A stretch of DNA of 64,000 nucleotides from Salpingoeca rosetta (GCA_033442325.1 JAWQFM010000003.1:767825-831824); one strand, 5' to 3'. Counted from the stretch's first letter, positions 40,964-56,651 are shown. Notes: generated by a model not told the origin, from the letters alone. A program made the numbers and translations.

Positions 40964-43900
40964 CTAGTTTTCGAGGCTCATGAGAAGAGCGGTGCCGCGC
41001 TTGATCCAGTGCTCAGCCGACCTGTCGCCGGATTTGAGGTCCACAGCAATCACAAACGACCATGCAGAGGCGCCGCCCTCACCGGCACGGTTCGGGTAGT
41101 AGTAGCAAGGACACGCATACACGTTCTTCTTTGTGGCCTTCTTCTCCACAGGCTTGAAGTGGATGGTGGGCATGGAGCACACCAGCTGCATCGGCGCAGC
41201 CTCCTCCAGGCACGCGCGCTTCTTGTCCCACCCTGCACCTTCCAGGAACAGGCCCTTGATGTACACGCCATCCTTGGGCTGCTCCACAATGTTCACATCA
41301 TCCAGCGTCATCACAGGGAACTCCCACGAGAGCGTGTCAACGGACACGGCGTTGTTGCGCGCGGCGTTCTGCAGCACAGCCGTCAGGAAGCCCGTGGGGA
41401 ACGTGAACGCAGACATCCAGTAGATGAGCGGCTGTCGCCCCGTGACCGCCCACTGCCGGAAAAAGTCCACGCGCTGGATGAGGTCGCGCATCCACCCGGC
41501 CAGCGGCTTCTGCGACGGATACGTCTTCTTCCACACCGGCGGCACCTGCCCGTTGAAGATGAACGTGAGAATCTCCTCCAGATCGGAGCTCATCACCACC
41601 AGGCCCTGGATGCCCTTGCGCAGCGCAATCAGGTGCCGCTCCATCAGCGACAGCAGCGCGTTGTACCGCGCAATCTCCTGCAGCAGCACCACGTTGAGCG
41701 GGTTGGGCTCCACAGCCAGCAGCTTGGCGGTCGCGTCGTAGTCAATCTTCTCCGGCAGCCGCTCAAGCATGTCCTGCGCCAGCTCAAGCACCACGTCCTC
41801 CCGGCTGCCGCCCTTCTCCGTCGTCACCGCGGGCTGCAGCGCCACCAGCGTGTCCAACAGCGTGCGCGCCTCCCGAATCATGCTGGAAATGTCCGCGTTG
41901 GCGTTCTGCCCAAAGGCGGACGGCGGGTCCGAGTTGGGCAGTGACGCAACGTAGTCCTTGTACGACTGCAGGCTGCCGTCGGTGGGCACATAGAACAGGT
42001 CGGACGACGACACGCGGAAGTGCTCCACGTTCAGCGCGTCCTCGCAGAAGAGCTCGTTGATGTAGGTGAGTAGCAGCCGGCGATCCCAGTCGTCCGTCAC
42101 GTGCCCGCCGTAGTTGATGCCGGCAATCAGGTACTTGAGCGCATCCCACGGCGTCTCCTGGTACTCGTCCAGGAACAGGCCGAGCAGGTTCTCAGACACC
42201 TCGTAGTCGGAGTCGTTGAAGGGGTACTGCACGTTCCATCCAAGCATCTGGAACTTGCGCCGCTCCAGCAGCACGCTGTGGAAAAAGGTCAGGCAGAACA
42301 TGAGCTTCTTGTACTTGGTCACCGCACCCACGCGCTCAAACTGGTCCTCCGTCAGCGTCGTGTACAGGCGCTTCATGTTGGCCTTGATGCCCTTGGGCGG
42401 CTCCGTCGTCATCTTGATGCCGGCCTGCAGGATGGAGATGGGGAACTGCGGGTTGGGCTTGGAGCTGAGCCACAGCCGGAAGTCCGGGTGCGGCTTGTTC
42501 ACCTCCAGCATCTCCACAATCTTGCTCAGCGACGGCATCCAGCTCAGCGAGAGATGGCAGTTGGCCAGGAACACCCAGTGCCCGTGCTTCGTGCCCTCCC
42601 GCAGCAGCCGCTCAGCGATGGGCGCCTGCCCCTGCCCGAGCGACAGCGTGTGGAAGCGCTCCGTCATGTTGCACCGGTCCGCCAGGTCCATCAGCTGCTT
42701 CGTCGGATCCACGCCCACGGAGAGCACGAAGATGAGCGGCGTCTGTGGCCGCGAGTCCGACAGCACCGCACGCATGTCCAGCGGCGGCGGCTCCACAAAC
42801 CGCTGCCCGAGGTTGTTCACAATAAAGTTGGTCGCCACCACAGACACGCGGTCCGGCCGCAGCGAGCGCACAATTGCCATGCGCTGCAGCTCGTTGCACG
42901 CGTTCTCCCACTCGCCAGGCAGGGTGGCGGCCTCCGGTTCGGGTGACACGTACCACGTGTGCCAGTCCCGAAGCATCTGCTCAAAGGAGGCGGCCAGCCC
43001 CGTGAACTTGGGCAGCAGGCGCTCCATCTCCGTGATGTTGTCCCACGCCTCGGAGCTGATCCACGACGGCGCCGGGTTTGGCATCTGCGCATCGCGGTCC
43101 AGCACCTGCCCGCCGCGCAGGAAGAAGTTGTACTCGTTCATCTGGATCTTGTTGGCGCGCTCCAGAATCTTCGAGTTCATGTGGAAGGCAAAGAGCAGCT
43201 TGTGCTTCTCAAACAGCCCGCGGCACGTGTACCGGTACACGGCGTACGTGTGGTAGTCGTTGATGCTCTCGATGCGCTGCTCCAAGCCGGCCGCCTTGGA
43301 GCTGCTGTCAATGCTCTTCACAAACAGGTTGATGTATGCCGCGAGCGAGAACTGGTACATGGGGTCGATGGACGCAATGTCGTTCATCACAAAGAACAGG
43401 ATGGACGCCCGCTCCGCGCAGGCGCGGTAGCCCTCGCGCGCCTCGTCAATCTCCGCCTCCGTGCGCTCCGCCACCACCAGCTGCTCGCCCACCTCCACAG
43501 AGGTCACCTTGGACGAGTTGAGCGTGTTGACGAGCTCCTCGTCGTCAAGCAGCGAGCCCTTGGCCGTGCTCAGCAGGTGCAGGATGCGGTCCTCCAGCTC
43601 CACCAGCTTCTTCTTGCCAGACGCAATCTTCGTCACCAGCTCGTTCTTCTGCTCCTCAAGCTCCGGCCGCTCCTTGCTCACCACGATGCCCAGCAGCTGC
43701 GCCTCCAAACCCTCCTCAACCACGGCAAAGTTGACAATGGTCGTCTTTGTGGACGTCTCCGGCGTGTAGTGCGGGTTGGCCATCTTGGTCGTGATGTAGA
43801 AGCGGAAGTCCGGATTGTACTCAATCTCCTTGTCACCGAGCCGCAGCATGAGGCGCCCGCCCACCTTGGTGAACGCCTTGTTCAGGATTGGCCCAAGTGA

Positions 43901-46900
43901 GGGATCCAGCTCCTCCCCGACGTTCTGCATCAGCACGGGCGTGCCAAACTGGATGGCGTTCTCAAGCGTGCGGATGTAGTCCGGCATCTGCAAGTCCACC
44001 ACCTTCAGCCCGTGCTCGCGCTCCATGTTCTTGATCCACTTGATGGCCTGGCCCTGCGGGTCAATCATCAGCGGCCAGCGCCGCCCGCGCGTCACAATCA
44101 CGCCGTTCTCCGTGGAAAAGCGGTCCGAGGGCAGGCCCTGGATGTTCCAGAAGCGCACGTCCGTGGGCTTGGCCAGGAACCGCGCCATGTCAAAGTTGGG
44201 GTCGCACGGGATCTCGCAGCTGCGCACGTGGCGCAGCCACCGCTGCACCACGCTGTCTCGGTACGTGGAGGTGAACGGTCCCAGGTACGACAGGAAGCCC
44301 GCGGCGAGCAGGCAGTCGCCAACGAGGTAGCCCATGCTCACGCGCAGCTCCGCCACGCTCTGCTCCCAGCGCGAGCGCTCGCCGGCCAAGCCCGTCACCA
44401 GCTTGGCCGCGCGGTCCAGCTTGAGCGCCGTCACGCGGCTCTTCTCCGCCAGCTCCTGCTGCTGCTTGAGCTTGGCCTCGTAGTTGCGCTGAAGCTCCTC
44501 CACCTTCTCCGTGACCTCCTTCAGTTTGCGCTGCGCATCGGCAAGCGACTTTTGCTTGGCGGCAAGCGCGTCCTGTGTCTTCTTCAGCGCGAGCCGCTTG
44601 GGCTCCACCACCTTGAAGATGCGCCCGTACACGTCCATGGCCCGCACCCACATGCACAGCGACTTTGCCGCGTTGGACACGCGCCCAACCTGGTCCGGGT
44701 CAAACTCCGGGCGCGTCACGTAGCTGTGGATCTTCCGCAACACCTTGTCCGACATGTTGTCCTTGTCAAACTCCACCAGCTGCTTGATGAAGTTGGGGTC
44801 GGCCAGTTGCCGCTTCGCCTCCGACCACTCCGGCTTGGACTTGCGCAGCACCATCACCGCCTCCATGACCATGGCAACCAGGTCTGGCGGCTTGGTGTAC
44901 GCCTTGATCTCGCTGATGTCGTTCTTGTTCAGCGACTTGAGCGCGTCCATGGCCGCCTGCAGCGCCGGCAGGGCCTCCTTCAGGTCTGCCTCGGCGTCCG
45001 CCGCAAGCTTCTCGCACTCCTGCGCCTCAATGCCAATCTTCTCCGAGCGCGCGCTCACGGCCTTCTGTTGGTCGTCCGCGTCGCGCTTCTGCTGCACGAT
45101 GATGACCAGGTAGTCATCGCACTCGCGCTGGAACTGCGCCACCTGCTTCTTCGTCTCCTCCAGCTCCACGCTCATCACCTCCACCTTCTCCCGCGTCTCG
45201 TCAATCTTGTCCAGGCCGTTGATCAGCTTGTCCGCGGCGTCGCCAAGCTCCTTGCGCTTCTCAGCCAGCAGAAGCCTGTAGCCCGTCACGAGCTCCAGGT
45301 AGTTGGTCGGGGTCACGTAGTTGTGCCGCTTGACCTCGTCCAGCATCTGCTGCGACGCCGTGAGCACGGACTGCTGGATCACGGCAAACGTCGACAGCAC
45401 CGCCGACCGCAGCCGCTCCGCCCAGTGGCTGCCCTTTTTCAGGCTGGCGTCGTCGTCCTTTGCGTCGCCGGCATCGGAGCCGTGGCCCGGCAGCCCGCCA
45501 CCAACGCTGTCGGCCGCATCGTCGCCGTCGCCGCCGCCGGCATTGCCACCCAGCACGGCCGCAGACATGCCCTTGGTCAGGTCCACGTCCGACATGAACC
45601 GGTCCGCGACGGCAAGCAGCGCGTCCTGCGGCCACGCGGAGAAGTAGTCGATGGTCGTGCAGTTGACCAGGCCAGGGTACATGCGCAGCCGGTTGCGGAA
45701 GGCCTCGCCGACGGGGCTCATGCACAGCACAACGTGCAGGTTGTTGCGTACGCGCTCGATGAAGAACTTGGTGAGGGACGAGGGCGTGTCCTCGACAGCG
45801 GCCTTCTTCGCCTCTGGCCGAAGATCGGAGAACACCTCCTCCATCTCCTCCGCCGGGAACAGGTTTGGCACCTCGCCCGAGCTGAGGATGTTGTTGATGT
45901 CCTCCAAAAAGTCCTCCAGCACAATCTGCGTGTCCACAAACAAGAACGTGGTGGGCTTGTTCTCCACGCCGGCCTGGCGGTACAGCGCCTTGAGGTCCTC
46001 CCTGAACTCTGTCATGCGGTACTGGCGCGTCACCTCAATCTGGAACGTCTTGTGCTCCAGCACAAACGCCGCCAGCCGGGTGAGCGACTGCCGCCCGCTG
46101 CCGCCAACGCCAATCAGCATCATGTTGCCGCGCTGCATGCGAATGACGCGCACAATGCGCGCCACGTGCTGCACCGCGTCGCGGAACAGCACCAGGTCCA
46201 TGGGCACGTGCCCGGAGGCGTTGTAGTCCTCCAGCTTCTCCTCCAGCACCGTCTTCAGTTTGTCGTGCTCGCGCACGTCCTCGTACACGGGGTCCTGGCC
46301 CTCGCGCATGAAGTCCGCAAACACGGGCACCTCGCGCCCAGGGCACAGCGTGGACAGCGACACGTCAAACACCTCGTGCAGCTTCTCCTCCACCAGCTTG
46401 GTGAACTCCACCTGGTCGCGCTCCGTGACAAGGCGGTCGCAGAAGACGCGGAAGCACTCGTGCACCCACAGGCGCGTGATGGCGTCCTTGGTGTCGTGGA
46501 AGTCCTTGTGCGCGCGCAGCATGCCCTGGAAGACCTTGGAGATGTCGCGCAGGTTGAAGAGGTAGTGGATCTTCGTGGGCGTGGGCAGCATGCGCGTGGA
46601 CATGTAGTTGTACACGTGGATGGTGGCCTCCGTGACCATGTTGCCCACGGGCTTGCACCCCTCATCAAAGTCCTGCAGCTTGAGGTTGATCATGGTACCG
46701 AAGATGCGCTTGATCTGCGAGTCTGTGGGGAAGGTCATGTTGAGCAGGTTGAACCGCGCCTGCAGGCGCCGCGAGATGATGGAGCGGCCGCCACCAGGAG
46801 GACCCATGGCCGCCACAATGCGCATGTCGCGGATGTGCTTGATGACCTGCTTCTCCCGGTCGTACACAAAGCCGTACTCCATCCACTGCCGGAGCAGCTC

Positions 46901-49900
46901 CAGCGGCGGCTGCGACCCAAACGTGTCCTTGGCCGGCATGTTGAGGTCATCCAGGAAGGTGAGCAGCTGCTTGCCGCCGAGCGGCACAAACACGCCCTTG
47001 GTGCGCTTCTCCACCTGCCCCTCGATAATCTCCTGCACGTTATTGCTCGACGTCTTGGAGGACATGTTGATGGTGAGGAGGTTGAACGTGGCCGGGTCCA
47101 GCTTGCGCATAACCATCTCCACAACCGAGGTCTTGCCCGTGCCCACGGGGCCCACCATCAGCGTCGGCTGCTTCGCGTCGATGAGCGTGCGCACCAGGTA
47201 CTGGTACCGCACCGTGTCCACCGTCGGCACGTGGATGCGGTGGAAGGGCGTGTCGGGGCTGTAGCGCCAGTTGGACCGCAGCTCCGTGTCCCAGTGCGCC
47301 CACGAGCCGTTCTTCACGTCAACAAAGTACTCGTACACCGTGTCCCTGCTCGGGAACTGGCCCTCCAGCTCGCGCAGGTAGTTGTCCACCAGCTTGCGCC
47401 CTTGCTCGTTCACGCCCGCACACACGGACCACACCAGGCTGAAGAGGAACCACTGCCCGACAATGCGCTCGCGCTCCTGCGACTGCTCCATGGCCTTGGT
47501 GCCGACGCCGCCTGCGCCGGCGTCGGTTGGCTGTACCCCGTTGCCCGGGGTGAGCAGCGCGGAGAGCAGGCAGCACAGAGACTTGACGCGGTTCAGCTGC
47601 GATGTTGGCACGAGCTCCACGCACTGCGCGTCCACAAACGTGAGCATCTTGTCCACAAACTTGTCAAAGAGGTCACGCAGGACGGGGACGAGCCCCTTGT
47701 CGGGGAAGGCGTCCAGCCACGACGCAACAAACGGCTGCCAGCCAAGGTCACGCGTGTCGTGGTACACCATGCCGCAGCGGGACACGGTAGCTGGGGAGGC
47801 CACGGCAAGGTCCTCCACCTCAAACAGCAAGGAAACCTGCGACGGCATGGAGATGCGCTCGCCGTTGATGAGCGTGAGGATCTTGTTGTCGTCCATGACT
47901 GAGTTCATGCTCTCAATCCACAACGTGTCGACGGGGCCGTCGAAGACAATCCACTTCTGGTCCGAGCGGTCGTCCGAGCACGTTGTGCGCATGACCGAAG
48001 ACAGCACGCCGTCCGCCCACTCGTTGGTGGCGATGTTGAACTCGCCATAGAGCTCTGCCAGGGACAGCGCCTTTGGGTTGAGCGGGTAGTCGCGCACCAC
48101 CTCAAACCCGGGCACGTTGTCCTTCTTACACTGCGACATGGCGCGCTGCAGCGTGCGCCAGGCCACGCTCTTGCCGCTGCCCGTGTGGCCAACGATCATG
48201 ACGGCGTGGCGCGAGTTCTTCGTCTCGTACAGCTGGATGACCTTGGTCACCATCCAGTCTGTTGTCTGGTACCCGTTTGCCTTGAGGTCCTGCACAATGG
48301 CCTCCTTGAACTTGCCGTAGTCCTCCTCGTGCGTCTCCACGCCGGGGAACAGATCGGCCATCATGCCCTGCAGCAGCGGCAGATCCGTGTTGGTCATCTT
48401 GGCCACGTTCATGTCCTTCATTGCCATGAGCAGGACCTCCTCGTGGGCAATGTCCGGCATGGCCTGGCGCTTGCGACCGGCGTACAGCAGCGTCGACACG
48501 AGCGCGCGCAGCCCAAAGTCATAGTGGTCCTGCTTGCTCAGCTGCTGCACCGCCAGCTTGTACAGCGTGTCTGCCTTCTTGGCCAGCACGCGCGTGTTGC
48601 TAAAGCCCTGCCCAAAGAGGATAATTTCTGCAATCAGGCCCGTGTCCGGCTTCATCATGGAGATGGGCCGGAACATGGACTTGAGGTTGTCTGGCAGCTC
48701 CGTGCGCCCGGCGTAGCCGGGGTTCATGGTGATGAAGACGCCGCAGGACCACCGCAGGTTGATCTCCGTGCCTTCAAAGATGAAGCGGCGCTGCGGGTTG
48801 TCCGGTGACAGCGGGATCTGCGCCTGCAGGATGGACAGAATCTGCTGTGCCACTACAGACAGCACTTCGATGTTGATGCGGTTGAACTCGTCAAAGCAGC
48901 CCCACGCGCCTGTCTGCGCCAGACCCGAGAACATCCCGCCAAGGCTCTTGTAGTCCATGCCATCAGAGCCTGCGCACGGCGTGTGTGATTGTGAGTGATT
49001 GTGAGTGAGTGAGTAAGAGTGATTGTGAGTGAGTAAGAGTGAGTAAGAGTGAGTGAGTGTGAAGTGCGAGAGAGAGAGAGAGAGTGTGTGTGTATATGTG
49101 TGTGAAGTGAGCGAGTAATAAGAGTGAGTGAGTGAGTGAGTGTGAGTGTGAAGTGAGCGGGAGAGTGTCTTCAATTAAATAAGTGCGTGTGGAAGTGTGA
49201 GGTGAGGAACAGTAGCAGAGGACGAGCGCGAGAACAGAAAAAGGCACACGCTTCTATTCGCACGCCACCACGTGCACTGCCACGTGGGCCTCGAAGAGCA
49301 CAAGTACTCACACTGCAACGACACAACACAAGGCGATGAAGAAGATGGTACGAGTGTGAGTCATGTGTCATTCACCTCCATGACATGAGCAAACCGCACC
49401 ATAAAAGCAGTGCAAACCGCAACATTAAATACCCATGGGCACACAGACAGGCAGACACAAACAAACAAACAAACAAATAAACAAACAAACAAACAAACAA
49501 ATAAACAAACAAACAAACAAACAAACAAACAAATAAACAAACAAACAAACAAAACAAAACAAACAACCAAACAAAACAAACAAACAAACAAATAAACAAA
49601 CATAGCACACTTACGTTGACGATGATGACGTAGTCACCGAGGGCTTTGCCAAGATCTTTGCACGTCTCTGTCTTGCCGGTACCTGCTGGCCCCTTGGGGC
49701 TGCCACCGCGCTTGAGATGCAGCGCCGTTGTCAGCGTCATGTAGCAGCGGTCTGTCAGCGGCGTGATGACAAGACGCCCAGAGTTGCCCAGATACTCGTA
49801 GCCATAGGTGAAGCGCGTATTTGTCTGCCGAATCACGCACTCGCCTACAGTGGCTGCATCCGAGCCGCTGGTGCCACCAATGCCACCAACACCTTTGCCC

Positions 49901-52900
49901 ACAACAGTAGCGGCAACAGCCTTGTCAACACCGACATCCTCCTTGCCGCCCTGGCCCTGGCCATCCTGCTGCGAGCCCTGCGCCTGCTGTTGTTGTTGCT
50001 GCTGCTGCTGCTGCTGCTGGGACTGCTCCCAGTAAAAGCGCAGCTGCATGAGCCACTCAAAGGCGTTGTGGTTGATGTTGGGTACTTTGGTCAGCCTGTC
50101 AATCACATCACGCGAGTGCACCTCGATGGTGATCAGCGCCACCAGCTTCTTGCGCTGCGTCTTGTTCTTCACGCTGCGCACAGCCTCCGTGAGCTTGTTC
50201 AGCAGCGACACCCACTTCTTCTTGAGCACCTTCAGGCCCTTCTTCGGGCCGCCCTTGGCGTCCGACATGGCTGCCACACACTGGCTGGTCCACGCCAGCT
50301 GGCTCACGGTGAGCACAAGCTGGCCCGCCCACTCGCGCAGCCACTTGTCGCGCTTCTGCTTCTTGTGGGCCACGATGGAGTCCTGCAGCAGGGCCTTGAG
50401 GCTGTGCCGCATCTCGCCTTCCACCTTCAGCAGCCACGACTCGACGGGGCCATCGAGCGCCACGGGAACCTTGAACGGCACATACTCGCCGTCGGGGGAG
50501 TGCATGCCCAGCGCCTGCGTGACCTTGCGGCCGGGGGGCGTGTTGAGCTCGAGCGCCTTGATGCTGTCAAAGCACTTGAGCAGGTGCGGCTGCACGGCCT
50601 TGGGGTTCTTGGACTGCCCGAGAATCTCCAGCAGGTCGTCGTTGGACACAAAGTAGAAGCGCGGGAAGTACTGCCGCTTCGTCTCCAGGTACTCGTCCAG
50701 CGACTTTTGGATCTGCTCCAGCACCAAGTTCATGTCGTTGAGCTGCTGCAGGAGGCCCTTGGCGTGCGTGCCGCGCTGCGCGTTGGGGTCCTCGTGCAAG
50801 CGCTGGCCAATCTTCAGAAACTGGTCGTCGATGGCGTCAAACTTGTTAGTCTCAATGGGCAGCTGGCGGCGAATGTCCTCGCCCGTGAAGATGTTCTCCA
50901 GGTACATCCACTGCCGCTGCACCGTCAGCAGAACCTCAATCACCTCCAGCACCATGGACAGCGTGCGCTCCCAAAAGTCCACGTCGCTCTCAAACGCCTT
51001 GACAAAGCGCGACGCCTTCATTGTGGACAGCGTCACCTGGTGGTCCTCCAGCAGCTGGTAGATCTCGTCGGTGCCCTTGAGCGTGTAGTGCCCGCGGTCC
51101 TTGTACGCCCCAATTTCCAGCGACGTGGAACCCCACACCTCTGCAATCTCGTCAATGCCCTGCTCAATTGACAGCTCCTTGCTGGCGGCGCCGGAGATGG
51201 CGTTGACCTCCTCCACAAAGCGGTCAAAGCCCAGGTCAATCATGGTGCCCAGCGTGAACTCCGCCGACGTGTGATCAAAGGTGCTGCCCACGTGCTCCTG
51301 CAGCTCGTGCCAGTGGCGCTGCCGCAGCGCCGGGTTCTTCAGGTCCTGGATCAGCGGCATGGTTCGCTTGAACTGCTCCACGCGCCGCCGGTACGTCTGC
51401 ACCATGTCCCAGTCCTTGTCCTTCACCTCGCGCGCGAGTTTCACAAACTTCTTGTTGTACTGCACGGCCTGCTGCTCCATGGCGTCCGTGTCCACGTCCG
51501 CAAACTGCGTCTGCTTCCACTCGTTGTAGCGGTCGTCCCATTCCTTGGCCAGGGTCCACAGCTGCGTGAGCTGGTCCAGGTCGCGGTGCGTGTCCGCCAC
51601 CTCCTTGAACGGCTCGTGGCTGATGCCAAACACCTTCAGGCCGGCCTTGAGCGACTCCTCGGACGAGCGGATGTTCTCCAGCTTGTGCCTAAACTCCTCA
51701 ATCGCCTGCAGCGCCTCGTCCGGGGTGATGGTTGCCGCAAAGGGCCCCGTGGTCACAAACGTCGCCCGCACCTCCGTCACGCTGCGCGAGAGGTCGTCCA
51801 TGTCCGCCAGCAGGTCCGTCTTGCACTTGGCCTTGGCGTCGGCCAGGATGTCGTCGGCCTGGTCCAGGGCGAGCTTGAACTTGTTCCACTGCGCAGGCAG
51901 GCTGTCCAGCTGCGCGCTCACCTCGTCGCTCAGCTCCACCTCGTACTTCTCCAGAATCTCAAACTCCTCCTGCAGCGGGCCAAACTTGGCCTCCACGCGC
52001 GGCGCCTGCGCCTTGGCTGCGTTGAGGTTCTCCACGGCCGAGATGACCTCGCTCAGGCCCTCCGGCACGCGCGACAGCAGCTCCGACTGCGTCTGCAGGT
52101 ACTCGCGCACGCGCGCCAGGTCGCCCTTGGCCCGGCGGTGAAGCAGCTCCGTGAGCTGCTCCTGCCACTGGTTGCACAGCTCAAGCAGGCTGTACTTGAG
52201 CATGGTGCAGTCCAGCTGCACAAAGTTGATCGGCGTGAACGTCTCCTCCTTCTGCACGTTGTTGGCCACCTCTGCATAGCGGGCAATGTCGCCATCAAAC
52301 TGGGCCAGCGGCGGGTTCATCTGCGCGTACCGCTGCAGGAAGCGCTCAATGTCCGTCTGCCAAATCTCGTGGTACGACTCGTGCCACACGCCCACGTAGT
52401 CGCGCAGGTTGGGCTCGTTGTCCTTGAGCCCTTGCTCCAGGTAGCGGCGCATCTTCAGCACGTCTGCGTCGTCACGCGAGCACTCGAAGAAGCTCAGCCC
52501 GTCGCGCGCTGCGGCTGCGGTTGTGGACACGGTTGCCGTGGACGCGGCGGCCAGCGACGACGTCGTGCCCGTCTTGGCCGCGCCTTTGCGCAGGGCGTTG
52601 TTGCTGCGGTTGCCGGCGCCGCTGCCGTGGGAGGATGTCGCAGCGAGAGAGGCCTGCGTGCGCGTTGTGCGCGAGTGCAGCTGTGCGTTGGCGGGGATGC
52701 CCTTGCACAGGATGGTGGTGAGCCTGTCCAGGCCAAGCAGCGCGTCGACCATCTCCTTGTGCAGGCTGAGGGCGACGTCGCAGAGGTGGCCGTACGTGGG
52801 CTGCAGCACGATGTTGCGGTCCTCCAGCGCCACGTTGACCCTGAACACGGGGCTGGGGATGCTCTTGCCATCGCCGACAATGGCGCGCACAAACTCGTTG

Positions 52901-54936
52901 AGGGATCGCTTGACATTTGTGCGCAGCGACTCCTCGAGCATGCGGTCCACCTTCTGCACGTAGCGCCGCCAGTGCTGCTGCACGTCGTGGCCGTCCTTCT
53001 TGAACACCTCGTACGTCTTCTGCAGGTTGCGCACAATCTCGCGGTGCACGTCGAGGAAGCGCTTGCGCACGGCGGCAATCTGCTCCTGCTGCGCCTCGTG
53101 GAACTCCGTCACCGTGTACACGCGCTTGAGGCTGATGCTGACCATGGTCTGCTTCTCCGCGTAGGCGCACAGGCGGGCGATGCGCTGGTTGGTGAGCATG
53201 TACTTGTCCACGTGCTCCTTGAGCTGCTTGGCGTGCATGCGGCAGTCGGCGACGTAGTAGTCCTTGATGCCCTTGGAGGCCCAGGTGAGCTTGGTGAGCC
53301 CGTGCTGCACCTTGCTGTCGAGGAAGCGGATGCGCTCACGGAAGAGGGCCTGCTCCTCCACGGAGAGCTTCTCGATGATCTGGTTGTAGTCGCGCACCAC
53401 CAGCATGATGAAGCAGCGCAGCGCGCGCAGCTCTTCGTTCTTGTGGAACATCTCCATGGCGGTGCTGGGGATGTCCAGGCCCAGTTTGAGCCAGTGCTTC
53501 ACCTCCGCAAACAGGACCAGCAGGTCCTTGTCAAAGTTGAGCAGCAGCAGCGTGCGCGTGCCGTCGCGCTTCAGCAGCGGGTTGTTGAGCAGGGCAGCCA
53601 GGTCCGTCTTTATCTCGCCCACCCATGTGGAGTGCGCCTTGCTGACAAAGTCGCGCAATGCGCCCGCGAGGAGCGTGTACTGGTGCAGCACCTCGTCCCC
53701 AAACGCGCCCGGCTGCACGTACTTGGCGTTGGCCAGCGCGCCGTGCACATGCGTGATCTGGTTGAGGAGGCCCGTGGCCCACATGCTGGCGCCGGCGTAC
53801 GGGGGCATGCCGGGCTCCAGCGGCGGCGCCTGGCGGTAGTTGTTGAAGTACGCCTTGACGTCCTCTAGCTGGTCTGCAAACATCTTGAACACGTGGGCCG
53901 TGCACTTGTCCAGCGCGCGCTTGACAATGTCGCGCTGGCCCAGGGGCCCAAAGGTTTCGATGAGCTCCACCCCGTTCTCCACGGTGGTGACGTGCTGGAA
54001 GGCCGTGGTCACCGCGTTCTGCACCATCACCTCGAGCTCCTTGACAGACTCCTTGAAGGTGTTGAAGTACCCCTGGTACTTGGAGGACTTGACGTCCAGG
54101 ATGTGTGCCTCGTGCTTACGCAGCAGCGTGAGGCTCTCCTCAAAGCGCGCCTCCACCCCGGAGAGTGCGCGGGCAACCTCGAGGCCGCGCGTGCCGGCAA
54201 AGTGGGGCAGCGGCACCTTGTCCACGCCCTTCTTGCGCGCAAAATGCTTCTGGCCCGAGCAGACGATGAGCAGGTCCTTGCACCGCTGGATAAAGGCGTC
54301 AATTTGGGCAAACACGCTGGAGTGGCTCACCACCCATGGCTTGCTCGAGTGCGGGAGGTGGGCGGCCTTGCGCTTCTCGTAGATGCTCTTCCACGCCTCG
54401 CAGCAGCTGATGGCGTCCGTGACAATGCGCACGCTGTCGTCCACATCACCCTCGAAGATCTCGTCCAGGGAGATGCACTCGCGGCAGCGCATGATGATGG
54501 CGTTGGAGACTTTCTGAAACAGGGACGTGATCTGCTCACGCGAGGTGTAGTGCTGCGAGTGAAGCTCAATCAGGCGGATCAGGTCAATGATGGTGGGCAG
54601 TTTCTCCGCAATGGCGTTGAGGTTAGACGTGTACAGCCGCGTGCACGGGTCACGCAGCACCCCGAGAAACTTGAAGTTGGCTTTGGACTACAGGAACAAA
54701 AAGGCGAGAAAGGGGTTGGGTGGTGGTTGGAGATGGTGTGTGTGTGTATGTGTGTGTGTGTATGTGTGTGTGTGAGTGGTTGAACAGTACTCAGGGCGCC
54801 CATAGACGCAACCAAAACCAGACACACAGACACACACGCACACAGACACAGAGGCAGACGAAGGCAGACATGCACAGATGGAGATAGACAGACACACAAA
54901 CAGACACAAGTTTAAGATCCCATACACGCACGTAAA

Positions 54937-54980
<44 letters not shown>

Positions 54981-56651
54981 TGCGAACAAACGAATGACGC
55001 ACCACTTCCATGCCGTCCTTGATGCGTTGGGACCAGCTCTGAAACTGGTTGAGGTACGAGGAGCCGGCTGCCTCCAATATCTTGAGAATGGTGGCAACGC
55101 CCTCCTTGTCCAGCTGCTCACTTATGCCAGACATGTCCTGGAAGCGCCGCTGCCAAAAGTCAATCTCATCCGTGGGCAGCTCAATATCTGCGCCCTGCTC
55201 CGCGTGCGTGGTGTTGAGCACATCCTTCACCTGGCGCGTCCAGCGGATGACGGTTGTCTCCAGGCGTTGCACCAAGTCACGGTCGGCAAGCATCACCTCC
55301 ATTGGGCGCGAGAGGTCCTCGTTGGGCACATACAGGACGGTGTTGTGGTCAGACTTGCTGGCCACGTCTGTGAGCGAGGACATGAAGCGGTTCATGCCTG
55401 CGGCAAACTCGTTGCGTACGCTGTCGGGCCACTGCTTGGCGGCGTGTGACATGAGCGGGGAGAAGAGGTCGTTCATCAGGCGCACGAGGCTGTCCAGGTA
55501 GTCCTGCTGCAGCACGCCCGTGTGCACAATGTCGTCAAACTGCGAGTCTGGGTAGATGAGCTCGGGCTTGGCGCGAACAAAGTAGATGAGGCGGCCAACC
55601 GGATATGCGGGTGGCGAGTGGCTGACAACCAGCATGCCCTCGGACTGGTACACGGTCAGCAGGACGGAGGAGCGCCGTGTGAAGAAGTTGAAGATGGCCT
55701 GGAACGACATGTCGTTGTTCCACTCACTCTCCGTCGTGCCCTCGAGGTGTACCCGCGACTTGATTTCGTTCACCTACGAGAAATAAAGCGGGGAGCAGAA
55801 GAGTTAGAAGTACAGCACAGGGACAGACGGATAGCAGGCGAGTGCTTGGGGCAGAGTCTTTGTGTGTGTGTGATGTGTATGTGTGTGTCTGTGTGTGTGT
55901 GTGTGCGTGTGCGATGTGTATGTGTGTGTGCGATGTGTATGTGAATGTCTGTGTGTGTGCGATGTGCATATGTGCACATGTGTGTGTGTGTGTGTGTGTG
56001 TTGCACACGACATGGTGGAGAATACATGAAACCCCGCCTCCCTTCCACAGAGTCTCAGGCCGCGCACACACGTGAATGAAAGAGTCATTTCATGGATATG
56101 TGCGTGCACAGGAGCCAGCGCTTCAAGTACATGAGCGGGCATGAATGCACTTTCCCACTGCAGTCACAACGTACCATAAAGTCACGAAGGTTTGCTGGCT
56201 TTGGCGGTGGAGCAGGGATGGGATCAGGGTCTGGCTGGGGATCGACCAGGACCTCAATCTCCTCACCGTCCGATTCCTCCTCGTCAGCAAGTTCCTCTTC
56301 ATCGTCTTCATACTCCTCATATTCCTCGTCCTCATTTCCTCCTCTGTCACCGACCGCAGAAGACGCACGTGTGTTGATGGCAGAGGCCTTTCTGGTACCG
56401 GCCTTGCTTTGTACAGCCGATGCCCGTTTGGAGGCCTTGATACTGCTGCTCTTGGACATGGCATTTGCGGTGCCTCCGTCAGCACGTGCGGCAGGCGCCT
56501 TGTCTTTGCTTTCCTGGGACTGCGGCTCCTGTTGTGCTTGCTCCTGCTGTGCTTGTTGGTTGTCTGTCGTGTCTGGCGGTGGTGTTGCGGAGGCGTTCGC
56601 TTCAGCTTGGGCCGAGGGCTCCTGTGCTGTTGCTGTTGTGTTCTCGCTCAT
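40964..56651 (-). CDS. DNAH2: Axonemal dynein heavy chain, DNAH2 / inner-arm I1(f)-beta type
   Basis: Exons 56651-56175, 55773-55003, 54687-49615, 49312 (1 nt) and 48969-40964. P-loops GPAGTGKT, GHTGSGKS, GPVGTGKT and GVGGSGRQS are present, as are CFDEFNR and ITMNPGYAGRTELP. The tail WPDSVRNEF..TVLYVPNE..DLVQRLETTVIRWTRQVK resembles DNAH2. Confidence 0.93.
49312..49312 (-). other. Predicted single-nucleotide exon (T) of the dynein heavy chain
   Basis: The minus strand reads TTGTGTTGTGTCGTTGCAG|T|GTGAGTAC. It joins upstream ...GTC AAC (phase 0) to downstream GC TCT GAT (phase 1), giving AAC TGC TCT GAT = N-C-S-D. Confidence 0.8.
49459..49601 (+). repeat. (CAAA/TAAA)n microsatellite in a dynein intron
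   Basis: Directly visible. Confidence 0.95.

What the first reader, a model, noticed from the sequence alone, without database searches (positions are those of the whole stretch)
48970..49614. Single-nucleotide exon rebuilds the conserved N-C-S-D motif in dynein AAA1
Seen in sequence: the large upstream exon ends ...ATC GTC AAC|GTAAGT (strong donor, phase 0, at 49615). The downstream exon begins CAG|GC TCT GAT GGC ATG GAC TAC (phase 1, at 48969). Direct joining would frameshift the remaining ~2,670 codons. Midway, the minus strand reads pyrimidine-rich ...GTCGTTGCAG T GTGAGT: a canonical acceptor and a canonical donor separated by exactly one base (49312). This splits the region into introns of 302 and 342 nt, typical sizes for this window. 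Including the T gives V-N-C-S-D-G-M-D-Y, the near-invariant motif after the P1 loop of dynein heavy chains (established knowledge). Inference: this is a constitutive 1-nt exon, probably spliced sequentially or by intron definition. Skipping it could act as an on/off (NMD) switch for an axonemal motor. One-nucleotide exons are extremely rare and are missed by gene predictors and read aligners.
Basis: partly seen in the sequence, partly recalled or inferred. Interest (0 to 1): 0.92.

Follow-up and report, generated by a model that had tools for sequence, protein, structure and literature searches.

The report
One-nucleotide exon in a dynein gene
A choanoflagellate flagellar-motor gene (DNAH2-type dynein heavy chain) really does contain an exon that is a single T, confirmed in RNA reads, and sister dynein genes of the same genome appear to carry one or two such one-letter exons at the very same codons.

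Summary
Observation confirmed and interpretation supported. On the minus strand the 5-kb upstream exon ends ...GTCAAC|gtaagt (49615). A lone T (49312) sits between ttgcag and gtgagt. The 8-kb downstream exon starts cag|GCTCTGAT (48969). Homology needs exactly one residue (Cys) between the two pieces.

RNA evidence: stranded RNA-seq reads run ...GCTCT-T-AAC..., with zero intron depth. Two transcript contigs from two other studies each carry exactly one extra letter between the exons.

DNA evidence: independent runs confirm the donor, the T context and the acceptor. Assembly error, the NVSSD alternative donor and a single 645-nt intron are therefore excluded.

The gene is the DNAH2 / inner-arm I1-beta orthologue. 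Relatives (Monosiga brevicollis, environmental choanoflagellates, a mollusc) have AACTGCTC uninterrupted, so the arrangement is lineage-specific.

Unexpected extra: four paralogues in the same genome (DNAH3-, 5-, 7- and 12-like) read AA|C|T|GC, which is two consecutive 1-nt exons. A DNAH10-like gene has only the T|G intron. These paralogue cases rest on sequence alone. First-stage notes on other pieces of this genome (s1-433340, s1-434339) flagged two of them.

One-nt exons are known (Arabidopsis APC11, Fusarium CYP621A, Coprinopsis), so the kind is not new. The NMD-switch idea has no support.

The parts
49615..54687 (-). Upstream giant exon of the DNAH2-type dynein heavy chain. It encodes the N-terminal region through the AAA1 P-loop (GPAGTGKTET) and ends ...ATC GTC AAC (Asn) in phase 0.
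   Evidence: The PDB alignment ends at DNAH2 N1828. RNA depth is about 3-17x.
49313..49614 (-). Intron 1 (302 nt), gtaagt...ttgcag. It contains a (GTTT)n microsatellite, listed as (ACAA)n on the + strand at 49457-49602.
   Evidence: RNA depth is zero. The donor is confirmed in the DNA contig X1 rec7.
49312..49312 (-). One-nucleotide exon: T, the first base of the Cys codon TGC in the N-C-S-D motif.
   Evidence: The AG|T|GT context is. The extra letter (A on the + strand) between the exons appears in 5/5 junction reads, and as one letter in two contigs. The DNA context is confirmed by X1 rec6 with 0 differences.
48970..49311 (-). Intron 2 (342 nt), gtgagt...gtgcgcag. It contains CACT/CTCA-type microsatellites, listed as (GTGA)n on the + strand at 48991-49157.
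   Evidence: RNA depth is zero over its unique part. The acceptor junction 31-mers are held by 18 runs from 7 studies.
40964..48969 (-). Downstream giant exon. It starts GC TCT GAT GGC ATG GAC TAC (xC-S-D-G-M-D-Y) and has about 2,667 codons to the stop, covering the rest of AAA1 through the C-terminus.
   Evidence: The PDB alignment starts at DNAH2 S1830.
54688..55005 (-). Neighbouring ordinary intron of the same gene (318 nt, gtggtg...cctgtag, with GT/CA microsatellites), used for size comparison.

Best explanation
The gene on the minus strand (about 40964-55800) is the choanoflagellate orthologue of DNAH2 / inner-arm I1(f) beta dynein heavy chain. Its two giant exons are separated by two ordinary U2-type GT-AG introns of 302 and 342 nt. 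These introns flank a constitutively included exon made of a single T (49312). Splicing gives ...GTC AAC T GC TCT GAT..., which restores the Cys of the invariant AAA1 motif V-N-C-S-D and keeps about 2,670 downstream codons in frame (shown by RNA). The 3' splice site of intron 1 and the 5' splice site of intron 2 are one base apart, so the two spliceosomes cannot assemble on both at once. The introns are therefore most likely removed one after the other by intron definition, as in recursive splicing. Either intron 1 goes first and leaves AACT|gtgagt as the donor, or intron 2 goes first and leaves ttgcag|TGCTCT as the acceptor. The order is inferred and not determined. The arrangement is derived in this lineage, because relatives have no intron at this site.
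For: Sequence anatomy.

Exactly one residue is missing between the two exon translations when aligned to solved DNAH2 structures. Orthologues read N-C-S in 94/94 matched cases.

RNA:
- In the raw stranded RNA-seq run X16, depth is 0 over 49038-49571 against about 6-27x in the exons.
- Five reads at 48969 continue as A+GTTGACGATGATGACG with agreement 1.
- Contig X5 rec13 maps 48881-48969 to positions 1-89 and 49615-975 to 91-451.
- Contig X8 rec19 maps to 383-471 and 21-381.
- Each contig therefore has one intervening letter. The three runs come from three studies.
- Reads lie on one strand only, consistent with a minus-strand gene.

DNA:
- X1 contigs cover 49155-49438 and 49608-49975 with 0 differences and do not carry the joined form.
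- The acceptor 31-mers are in 18 runs from 7 studies.
- The gene has one locus in the genome, so there is no processed copy.

The motif YAG-T-GTRAGT is expected in the gap with probability about 0.00075. Intron sizes match the neighbouring intron and 12 introns of the paralogues, which are 185-401 nt.
Against: No read shows a half-spliced intermediate (AAC-T-gtgagt or ttgcag-T-GCTCT). That the T comes from 49312 is therefore inferred from its splice-site context.

RNA depth is low (about 10x, 5 junction reads). A minority skipped or alternative isoform below roughly 20% cannot be excluded, especially if NMD removes it.

The letter in the two contigs is not printed by the tool. Only its count (one) is given.

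The minimal AG-T-GTR motif is not rare in this GT-rich sequence (0.24).
Confidence: 0.93

Rival explanations
1. Assembly or sequencing error. The genome really has a T at one exon-intron boundary (for example cag|TGCTCT) and a single 645-nt intron, and the internal AG-T-GT is a coincidence.
For: Spliced reads alone cannot tell where the T comes from. X1 contigs did not cover 48923-49154. The minimal AG-T-GTR motif arises by chance in 24% of resamples.
Against: All 31-mers of window:48940-48999 span 48969/48970, and both sampled words are held by 18 runs from 7 studies dated 2013-2025. The donor (49608-49975) and the T context (49155-49438) match independent DNA contigs with 0 differences. The full-strength composite site has a chance of about 0.00075. 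Four paralogues show the same device at the same codons.
Confidence: 0.01
2. A single intron with another in-frame junction, such as the alternative donor 4 nt downstream (AACGTAA|GCTCT, giving N-V-S-S-D), or a non-AG acceptor giving N-C-A-G-S-D.
For: Both junctions would be in frame. GTGTGC is a possible weak donor.
Against: All 5 junction reads and both contigs show AAC+1 letter+GCTCT. No other joint was listed at a threshold of 2% and 3 reads. Homology requires exactly one residue between N and S.
Confidence: 0.02
3. The T is added post-transcriptionally (insertional RNA editing), or the gene is a frameshifted pseudogene and the reads come from another copy.
For: None beyond the formal possibility.
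Against: Only one locus in the 55.4-Mb genome matches at 100%. Both giant ORFs are intact. Reads match the flanking exons exactly. A canonical AG|T|GT site lies in the gap. From general knowledge rather than any test here, insertional editing is not known in nuclear mRNAs of this group.
Confidence: 0.01
4. The 1-nt exon acts as a regulated on/off switch. Skipping it gives a frameshift and NMD, which would tune axonemal dynein output.
For: Skipping would put a stop about 38 codons downstream (read). Six axonemal dynein paralogues share introns at these bonds while cytoplasmic dyneins do not. This could hint at shared control.
Against: No skipped reads were seen and there is no intron retention. 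No condition comparison was done. The paralogue pattern can be explained by mutational history alone.
Confidence: 0.07

Closest known systems
Arabidopsis thaliana APC11 single-nucleotide exon (Guo & Liu 2015, PMC4674806)
   Same: It is a constitutive 1-nt exon flanked by two short GT-AG introns, it is needed to keep the frame, and annotation missed it. The authors also propose intron definition plus sequential (recursive-like) removal.
   Different: It is in a plant and in an unrelated gene. It was validated there by reporter constructs, whereas here the support is public RNA-seq only. No paralogue series and no tandem 1-nt exons were reported.
Fusarium CYP621A one-nucleotide exon (Nelson & Syed 2026, PMC12940212) and the 13 one-nt exons in the Coprinopsis cinerea long-read annotation (PMC12230235)
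   Same: A 1-nt exon supplies one base of a codon in a highly conserved motif. It was detected through exon-phase mismatch and confirmed with SRA reads.
   Different: These are fungi. In Fusarium the exon is conserved across 20 orthologues. Here the orthologues of related species lack the introns altogether.
Recursive splicing at ratchet points (zero-nucleotide exons, for example Drosophila Ubx; discussed in PMC4674806)
   Same: A 3' splice site is juxtaposed with a 5' splice site inside an intervening sequence. Stepwise removal regenerates a splice site after the first step.
   Different: Ratchet points leave no nucleotide in the mRNA and serve very long introns. Here one nucleotide is kept and the whole gap is only 645 nt.
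Placozoan mitochondrial cox1 single-base-pair exon (PMC5436844)
   Same: A 1-bp exon revealed by deep RNA sequencing.
   Different: It is organellar and the splicing is not spliceosomal, so the mechanism is different.
DNAH2 / Chlamydomonas I1(f) beta inner-arm dynein heavy chain
   Same: The best PDB matches for both exon pieces are 8j07_k9 and 9fqr_D0. The P-loop GPAGTGKTET and the NCSD motif are present. Identity to the Monosiga brevicollis orthologue is 83% over the first 300 residues of the downstream exon.
   Different: The gene structure differs. Orthologues examined in M. brevicollis, Lottia and environmental choanoflagellates have no intron at the Asn-Cys codons.

Membership tests
Spliceosomal single-nucleotide exon | The mature mRNA carries one nucleotide between two exons that is contiguous with neither of them in genomic DNA. 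| tested here: met
   5/5 reads read A (+ strand) between 48969 and 49615, and contigs X5 and X8 have exactly one letter there. The genomic neighbours on both sides are G.
Spliceosomal single-nucleotide exon | The nucleotide lies in the gap directly between a canonical acceptor AG and a canonical donor GT, and the flanking introns are of workable size. | tested here: met
   ttgcag T gtgagt. The introns are 302 and 342 nt. It is the only feasible AG-T-GT site in the gap.
Spliceosomal single-nucleotide exon | The genomic sequence at all three junctions is correct and not an assembly artefact. | tested here: met
   X1 rec6 and rec7, 0 differences; 18 runs from 7 studies hold the acceptor words.
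Spliceosomal single-nucleotide exon | Constitutive inclusion. | tested here: inconclusive
   No skipped or retained form was seen. However, depth is only about 10x, with one raw run and two contig sets.
Spliceosomal single-nucleotide exon | Direct proof that this very base is the one spliced in, from intermediates, lariats or mutagenesis. | not testable with these tools
   No intronic reads were seen at this depth.
Recursive-splicing ratchet point (zero-nt exon) | AG|GT are directly juxtaposed and nothing is retained in the mRNA. | tested here: not met
   One T is retained.
Stwintron (spliceosomal twin intron) | An internal intron interrupts a splice signal of an outer intron, and both are removed without leaving sequence. 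| tested here: not met
   The T stays in the mRNA. Both introns have complete signals of their own.
Introner-like / transposon-derived intron family | Many similar copies elsewhere in the genome. | tested here: not met
   The unique core 49155-49456 is single-copy in the 55.4-Mb genome. The introns of the paralogues share only microsatellites.
DNAH2 / I1-beta axonemal dynein heavy chain | Best reciprocal-type similarity to DNAH2 over AAA1, with the dynein domain set. | tested here: met
   the top named hits are all DNAH2, and the Pfam dynein domains are present in the orthologues.

The most novel reading that the evidence does not exclude
The window's 1-nt exon may be one product of a lineage-specific, site-directed process. 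Candidates are homing-like reverse splicing, repeated gain at one hotspot, or conversion between paralogues. This process would have planted introns at the three consecutive bonds AA^C^T^GC of the same Asn-Cys codon pair in six axonemal dynein heavy-chain genes of one choanoflagellate. The result is two consecutive 1-nt exons in four of them (DNAH3-, 5-, 7- and 12-like), one in DNAH2, and none in DNAH10-like. Tandem 1-nt exons and such positional recurrence among anciently diverged paralogues have not been described in the papers found here.
Probability: 0.6. Interest if true: 0.9.

Novelty: new member of a known kind. Interest (0 to 1): 0.78.

Why it matters
This is an RNA-backed case of the smallest possible exon, in a close unicellular relative of animals and in an essential flagellar motor gene. 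As far as the literature search found, it is the first outside plants and fungi.

It shows that standard gene finders and aligners will break a 4,400-residue protein at this point.

The paralogue series has the same three adjacent bonds hit in six genes, while all relatives examined lack introns there. If RNA data confirm it, the series offers a natural system in which to ask two questions. One is how spliceosomal introns are gained at specific sites. The other is how the spliceosome handles splice sites that overlap physically.

Tried and rejected
- Assembly error at the donor, the T or the acceptor: rejected.
- Alternative donor giving NVSSD, or any other joint: not seen.
- Processed or second gene copy: only one locus.
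- Introner or transposon family: the intron core is single-copy.
- Homology among the 14 introns of the five genes: only microsatellite matches. Recent conversion or duplication of the introns therefore cannot be shown.
- Genome-wide excess of the composite motif: none.
  - YYYYNYAGNGTAAGT gives 14 hits against 21 for the reversed control.
  - The paired motif gives 8 hits against 46 for the control, and 3 of the 8 are the dynein sites.
  - The device is therefore site-specific and not pervasive by this measure.
- Ancestral intron at this site: not found in M. brevicollis, a Tara scaffold, a Logan contig or Lottia for DNAH2. Also not found in an 87.5%-identical environmental relative, two other choanoflagellate contigs or the sponge Oscarella for DNAH7.
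- Known RNA family or unusual structure in the introns: only a snoZ178 match far below threshold (21.6 against 100 bits). The fold z-score is -0.89.
- Antisense gene: no reads on the other strand.
- Nematostella locus look-up: failed, the isoform is not on record.
- First attempt at the DNAH7-like query had wrong coordinates; it was corrected.

Full report
**The observation**

- The upstream exon ends ATC GTC AAC at 49615 and is followed by gtaagt.
- A single T at 49312 lies between cgttgcag (49320-49313) and gtgagt (49311-49306).
- The downstream exon begins at 48969 as GC TCT GAT GGC ATG GAC TAC, after gtgcgcag.
- The two intervening pieces are 302 and 342 nt.

The ORF list and tblastn with a related protein show the gene consists of very few exons. 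A 5.07-kb exon (49615-54687) and an 8.0-kb exon (40964-48969) flank the gap. The next intron upstream (54688-55005) is 318 nt and, like the two here, is rich in microsatellites. The two intron sizes are therefore ordinary for this gene.

**What the gene is, and what the frame needs**

Both exon translations hit solved axonemal dynein heavy chains best, with DNAH2 on top.
- The upstream piece aligns to human DNAH2 (8j07_k9) residues 1752-1828 and ends on Asn.
- The downstream piece starts at Ser1830.

Exactly one residue is missing. Its last two bases are GC, so the missing base decides between Cys, Ser, Gly and Arg.

A search of public proteins returned DNAH2 orthologues throughout. In all 94 whose motif could be matched, the sequence is N-C-S. 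The required base is therefore T.

**RNA evidence**

I laid one raw stranded RNA-seq run (X16) and Logan contigs of three older runs (X8, X5, X1; four different studies) on window:47970-50614.
- In X16 the exons have about 6-27x depth, and 49038-49571 has none.
- All reads lie in one orientation, as expected for a minus-strand gene, so there is no antisense transcript.
- Five reads ending at 48969 continue, with complete agreement, as A followed by GTTGACGATGATGACG on the + strand. On the minus strand this is CGTCATCATCGTCAAC-T-GCTCT.
- Contig 13 of X5 (489 nt) maps its positions 1-89 to 48881-48969 and 91-451 to 49615-49975.
- Contig 19 of X8 (471 nt) maps 383-471 and 21-381 to the same two blocks.
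- Each contig therefore has exactly one letter between the exons.
- No other joint and no AACGTAA|GCTCT form was listed at a 2% threshold.

The mRNA thus has one extra T. That T is contiguous with neither exon in the DNA, because both genomic neighbours are G.

**DNA evidence**

X1 behaves as a DNA run. It covers intron sequence and lacks the joined form.
- Its contigs match 49155-49438 (the T and its splice signals) with no difference.
- Its contigs match 49608-49975 (the donor) with no difference.

The acceptor was not covered there, so I used the last run search on window:48940-48999. In that stretch every 31-mer spans 48969/48970. Both sampled words are held by 18 runs from 7 studies dated 2013-2025.

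A protein search of the whole 55.4-Mb assembly finds only one locus at 100% identity, so no processed copy can explain the reads. Assembly error is excluded.

**Chance**

The minimal motif AG-T-GTR turns up in 24% of first-order Markov resamples of this GT-rich gap, so by itself it proves little. The full site YAG-T-GTRAGT occurs in 0.075% of resamples. It is the only YAGNGTRAGT match in the 64-kb window.

Only one other AG-T-GT exists in the gap. It sits 3 nt into intron 1, where it would need a 5-nt intron. The T at 49312 is therefore the only workable source. This step is inference, because no half-spliced read was seen.

**Mechanism**

What is shown: two GT-AG introns are absent from the mRNA and one T remains.

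What is inferred: the acceptor AG of intron 1 and the donor GT of intron 2 are separated by one base, so the factors that bind them must overlap. The introns are therefore probably removed in sequence by intron definition. The first removal turns the T into the end or the start of a normal large exon, giving either AACT|gtgagt or ttgcag|TGCTCT. This is the model proposed for the Arabidopsis APC11 1-nt exon.

I found no known RNA family and no unusual fold (z = -0.89) in the unique core of the gap.

**Evolution**

For DNAH2, the following read AAC TGC TC(T/A/G) without interruption:
- the Monosiga brevicollis genomic locus (L001);
- a Tara metagenome scaffold with 92% protein identity (L003);
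- a Logan contig with 91% identity (L002).

The mollusc Lottia has no intron there either. The two introns are therefore derived in this lineage. Their unique core is single-copy, so they are not members of an introner family.

**An unexpected extension: the paralogues**

I searched the assembly with the first 100 residues of the downstream exon. This gave 13 matches, which represent 12 dynein heavy-chain genes, because L016 and L017 are two pieces of one gene. I inspected the same codons in eleven of them; L015 was not inspected for a P-loop.

| Locus | Place in G000 | Class by best PDB hit | Arrangement at the Asn-Cys codons |
|---|---|---|---|
| L008 | C20 | DNAH12-like | AA\|C\|T\|GC |
| L009 | C7 | DNAH3-like | AA\|C\|T\|GC |
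| L010 | C21 | DNAH7-like | AA\|C\|T\|GC |
| L012 | C23 | DNAH5-like | AA\|C\|T\|GC |
| L005 | this window | DNAH2 | AAC\|T\|GC |
| L016 | C27 | DNAH10-like | AACT\|G only (ordinary phase-1 intron) |

In the four genes with AA|C|T|GC:
- The upstream exon ends ...TTCAA|gt and the downstream exon starts ag|GCTC.
- The gap holds, in the right order, (y)cag C gta(a/c)g and (t/a)ag T gtaagt.
- These are two consecutive 1-nt exons that spell AA-C-T-GC.
- L012 also has an 18-nt microexon just upstream.

The other six paralogues, including the cytoplasmic-type ones, have no intron at the site.

All 14 introns are 185-401 nt and GT-AG, and they share nothing but microsatellites. The chance of the required pair of sites is 0.004-0.02 per gene.

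Genome-wide the paired motif is rare. There are 8 hits against 46 for the reversed control, and 3 of the 8 are these dynein sites. The single strict motif is not enriched either (14 against 21).

For DNAH7, four relatives have TTC AAC TG(C/T) TC uninterrupted:
- an environmental relative with 87.5% nucleotide identity, which has an intron 27 nt upstream instead (L024);
- two further choanoflagellate contigs (L025, L027);
- the sponge Oscarella (L026).

Introns therefore sit at three adjacent bonds of one codon pair in six anciently diverged paralogues of one lineage only. Possible causes are:
- independent random gain, which is not credible;
- site-directed gain;
- reverse splicing into paralogous transcripts that share the exon context;
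- conversion between paralogues.

I could not tell these apart.

First-stage notes on other pieces of this genome describe two of the cases: s1-433340 (1001 letters, matching L012) and s1-434339 (687 letters, matching L009). I reached both independently. Other notes claim 1-nt exons in a PARP gene and a GH38 gene (s1-432392, s1-433370), which I did not test.

**Comparison with what is known**

One-nucleotide spliceosomal exons are documented in:
- Arabidopsis APC11 (PMC4674806);
- Fusarium CYP621A, described in 2026 as the second example (PMC12940212);
- Coprinopsis cinerea, with 13 in a long-read annotation (PMC12230235).

A placozoan mitochondrial 1-bp exon is a different, organellar case (PMC5436844). 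Literature searches found nothing on choanoflagellates or on tandem 1-nt exons.

The device differs from Drosophila-type ratchet points and from fungal stwintrons, because a base is retained.

**Organism**

The organism is a choanoflagellate. This rests on 83% identity to the M. brevicollis orthologue and a 55.4-Mb assembly in 68 contigs. Its name was not given, and I did not try to establish it.

**Verdict**

The interpretation as a constitutive 1-nt exon is supported by RNA from three studies and by DNA from many runs. The kind is known, but the lineage and the gene are new. The paralogue series is the most interesting lead and needs RNA confirmation.

Noticed in passing
L008 (G000:C20:943594-946878, -), L009 (C7:1250850-1254134, +), L010 (C21:1105178-1108462, -), L012 (C23:470061-473348, +): Four paralogous axonemal dynein heavy-chain genes (DNAH12-, 3-, 7- and 5-like) split the same Asn-Cys codons as AA|C|T|GC. 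Two consecutive 1-nt exons are each flanked by canonical AG and GTA(A/C)G. The three introns per gene are 185-401 nt. This rests on sequence and homology only, with no RNA check.
   Followed up: partly
L016 / L022 (G000:C27:467462-470608, +): The DNAH10-like paralogue has only an ordinary phase-1 intron at AACT|gtacgt...ccag|GT. This is the same bond as intron 2 of the window's gene. Together the paralogues form a nested series: c only, then b+c, then a+b+c.
   Followed up: partly
L012, about 260 nt into the 1001-nt gap (G000:C23): An 18-nt microexon GCTTTGCGTCGTTTTCAA (…L-C-V-V-F-N) precedes the two 1-nt exons. Four introns therefore fall within 20 coding nucleotides.
   Followed up: no
L024:1-80 (ENA metagenome contig, DNAH7 orthologue of a close relative): The relative has an intron acceptor (acatacag|GCTGTTGCT) 27 nt upstream of the Asn-Cys codons, at a place where the window's genome has none. 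It has no intron at the codons themselves. This points to fast intron turnover around this motif.
   Followed up: no
window 49976-50029 (minus strand, inside the upstream exon): A poly-glutamine / Gln-Gly-rich insertion ([24 protein letters not shown]...) lies in the linker before AAA1. It is absent from the human DNAH2 alignment. RNA depth dips there because the read tool skips the repeat.
   Followed up: no
window 48911 and 48913; loose ends at 48875, 48910, 48922: Apparent variants and loose read ends in the AWGCFDEFN-coding stretch come from paralogous dynein transcripts that share this conserved nucleotide run (for example the DNAH5-like ...FRGLGRIYKG). They are not alleles or RNA editing.
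   Followed up: partly
G000:C7:1275178-1275192 (-), C22:595683-595697 (-), C28:757856-757870 (+): These are further strict matches to a Y-rich acceptor, one base (C or T), then GTAAGT, outside the dynein sites. They were not inspected and could be other 1-nt exons. First-stage notes claim such exons in PARP and GH38 genes.
   Followed up: no
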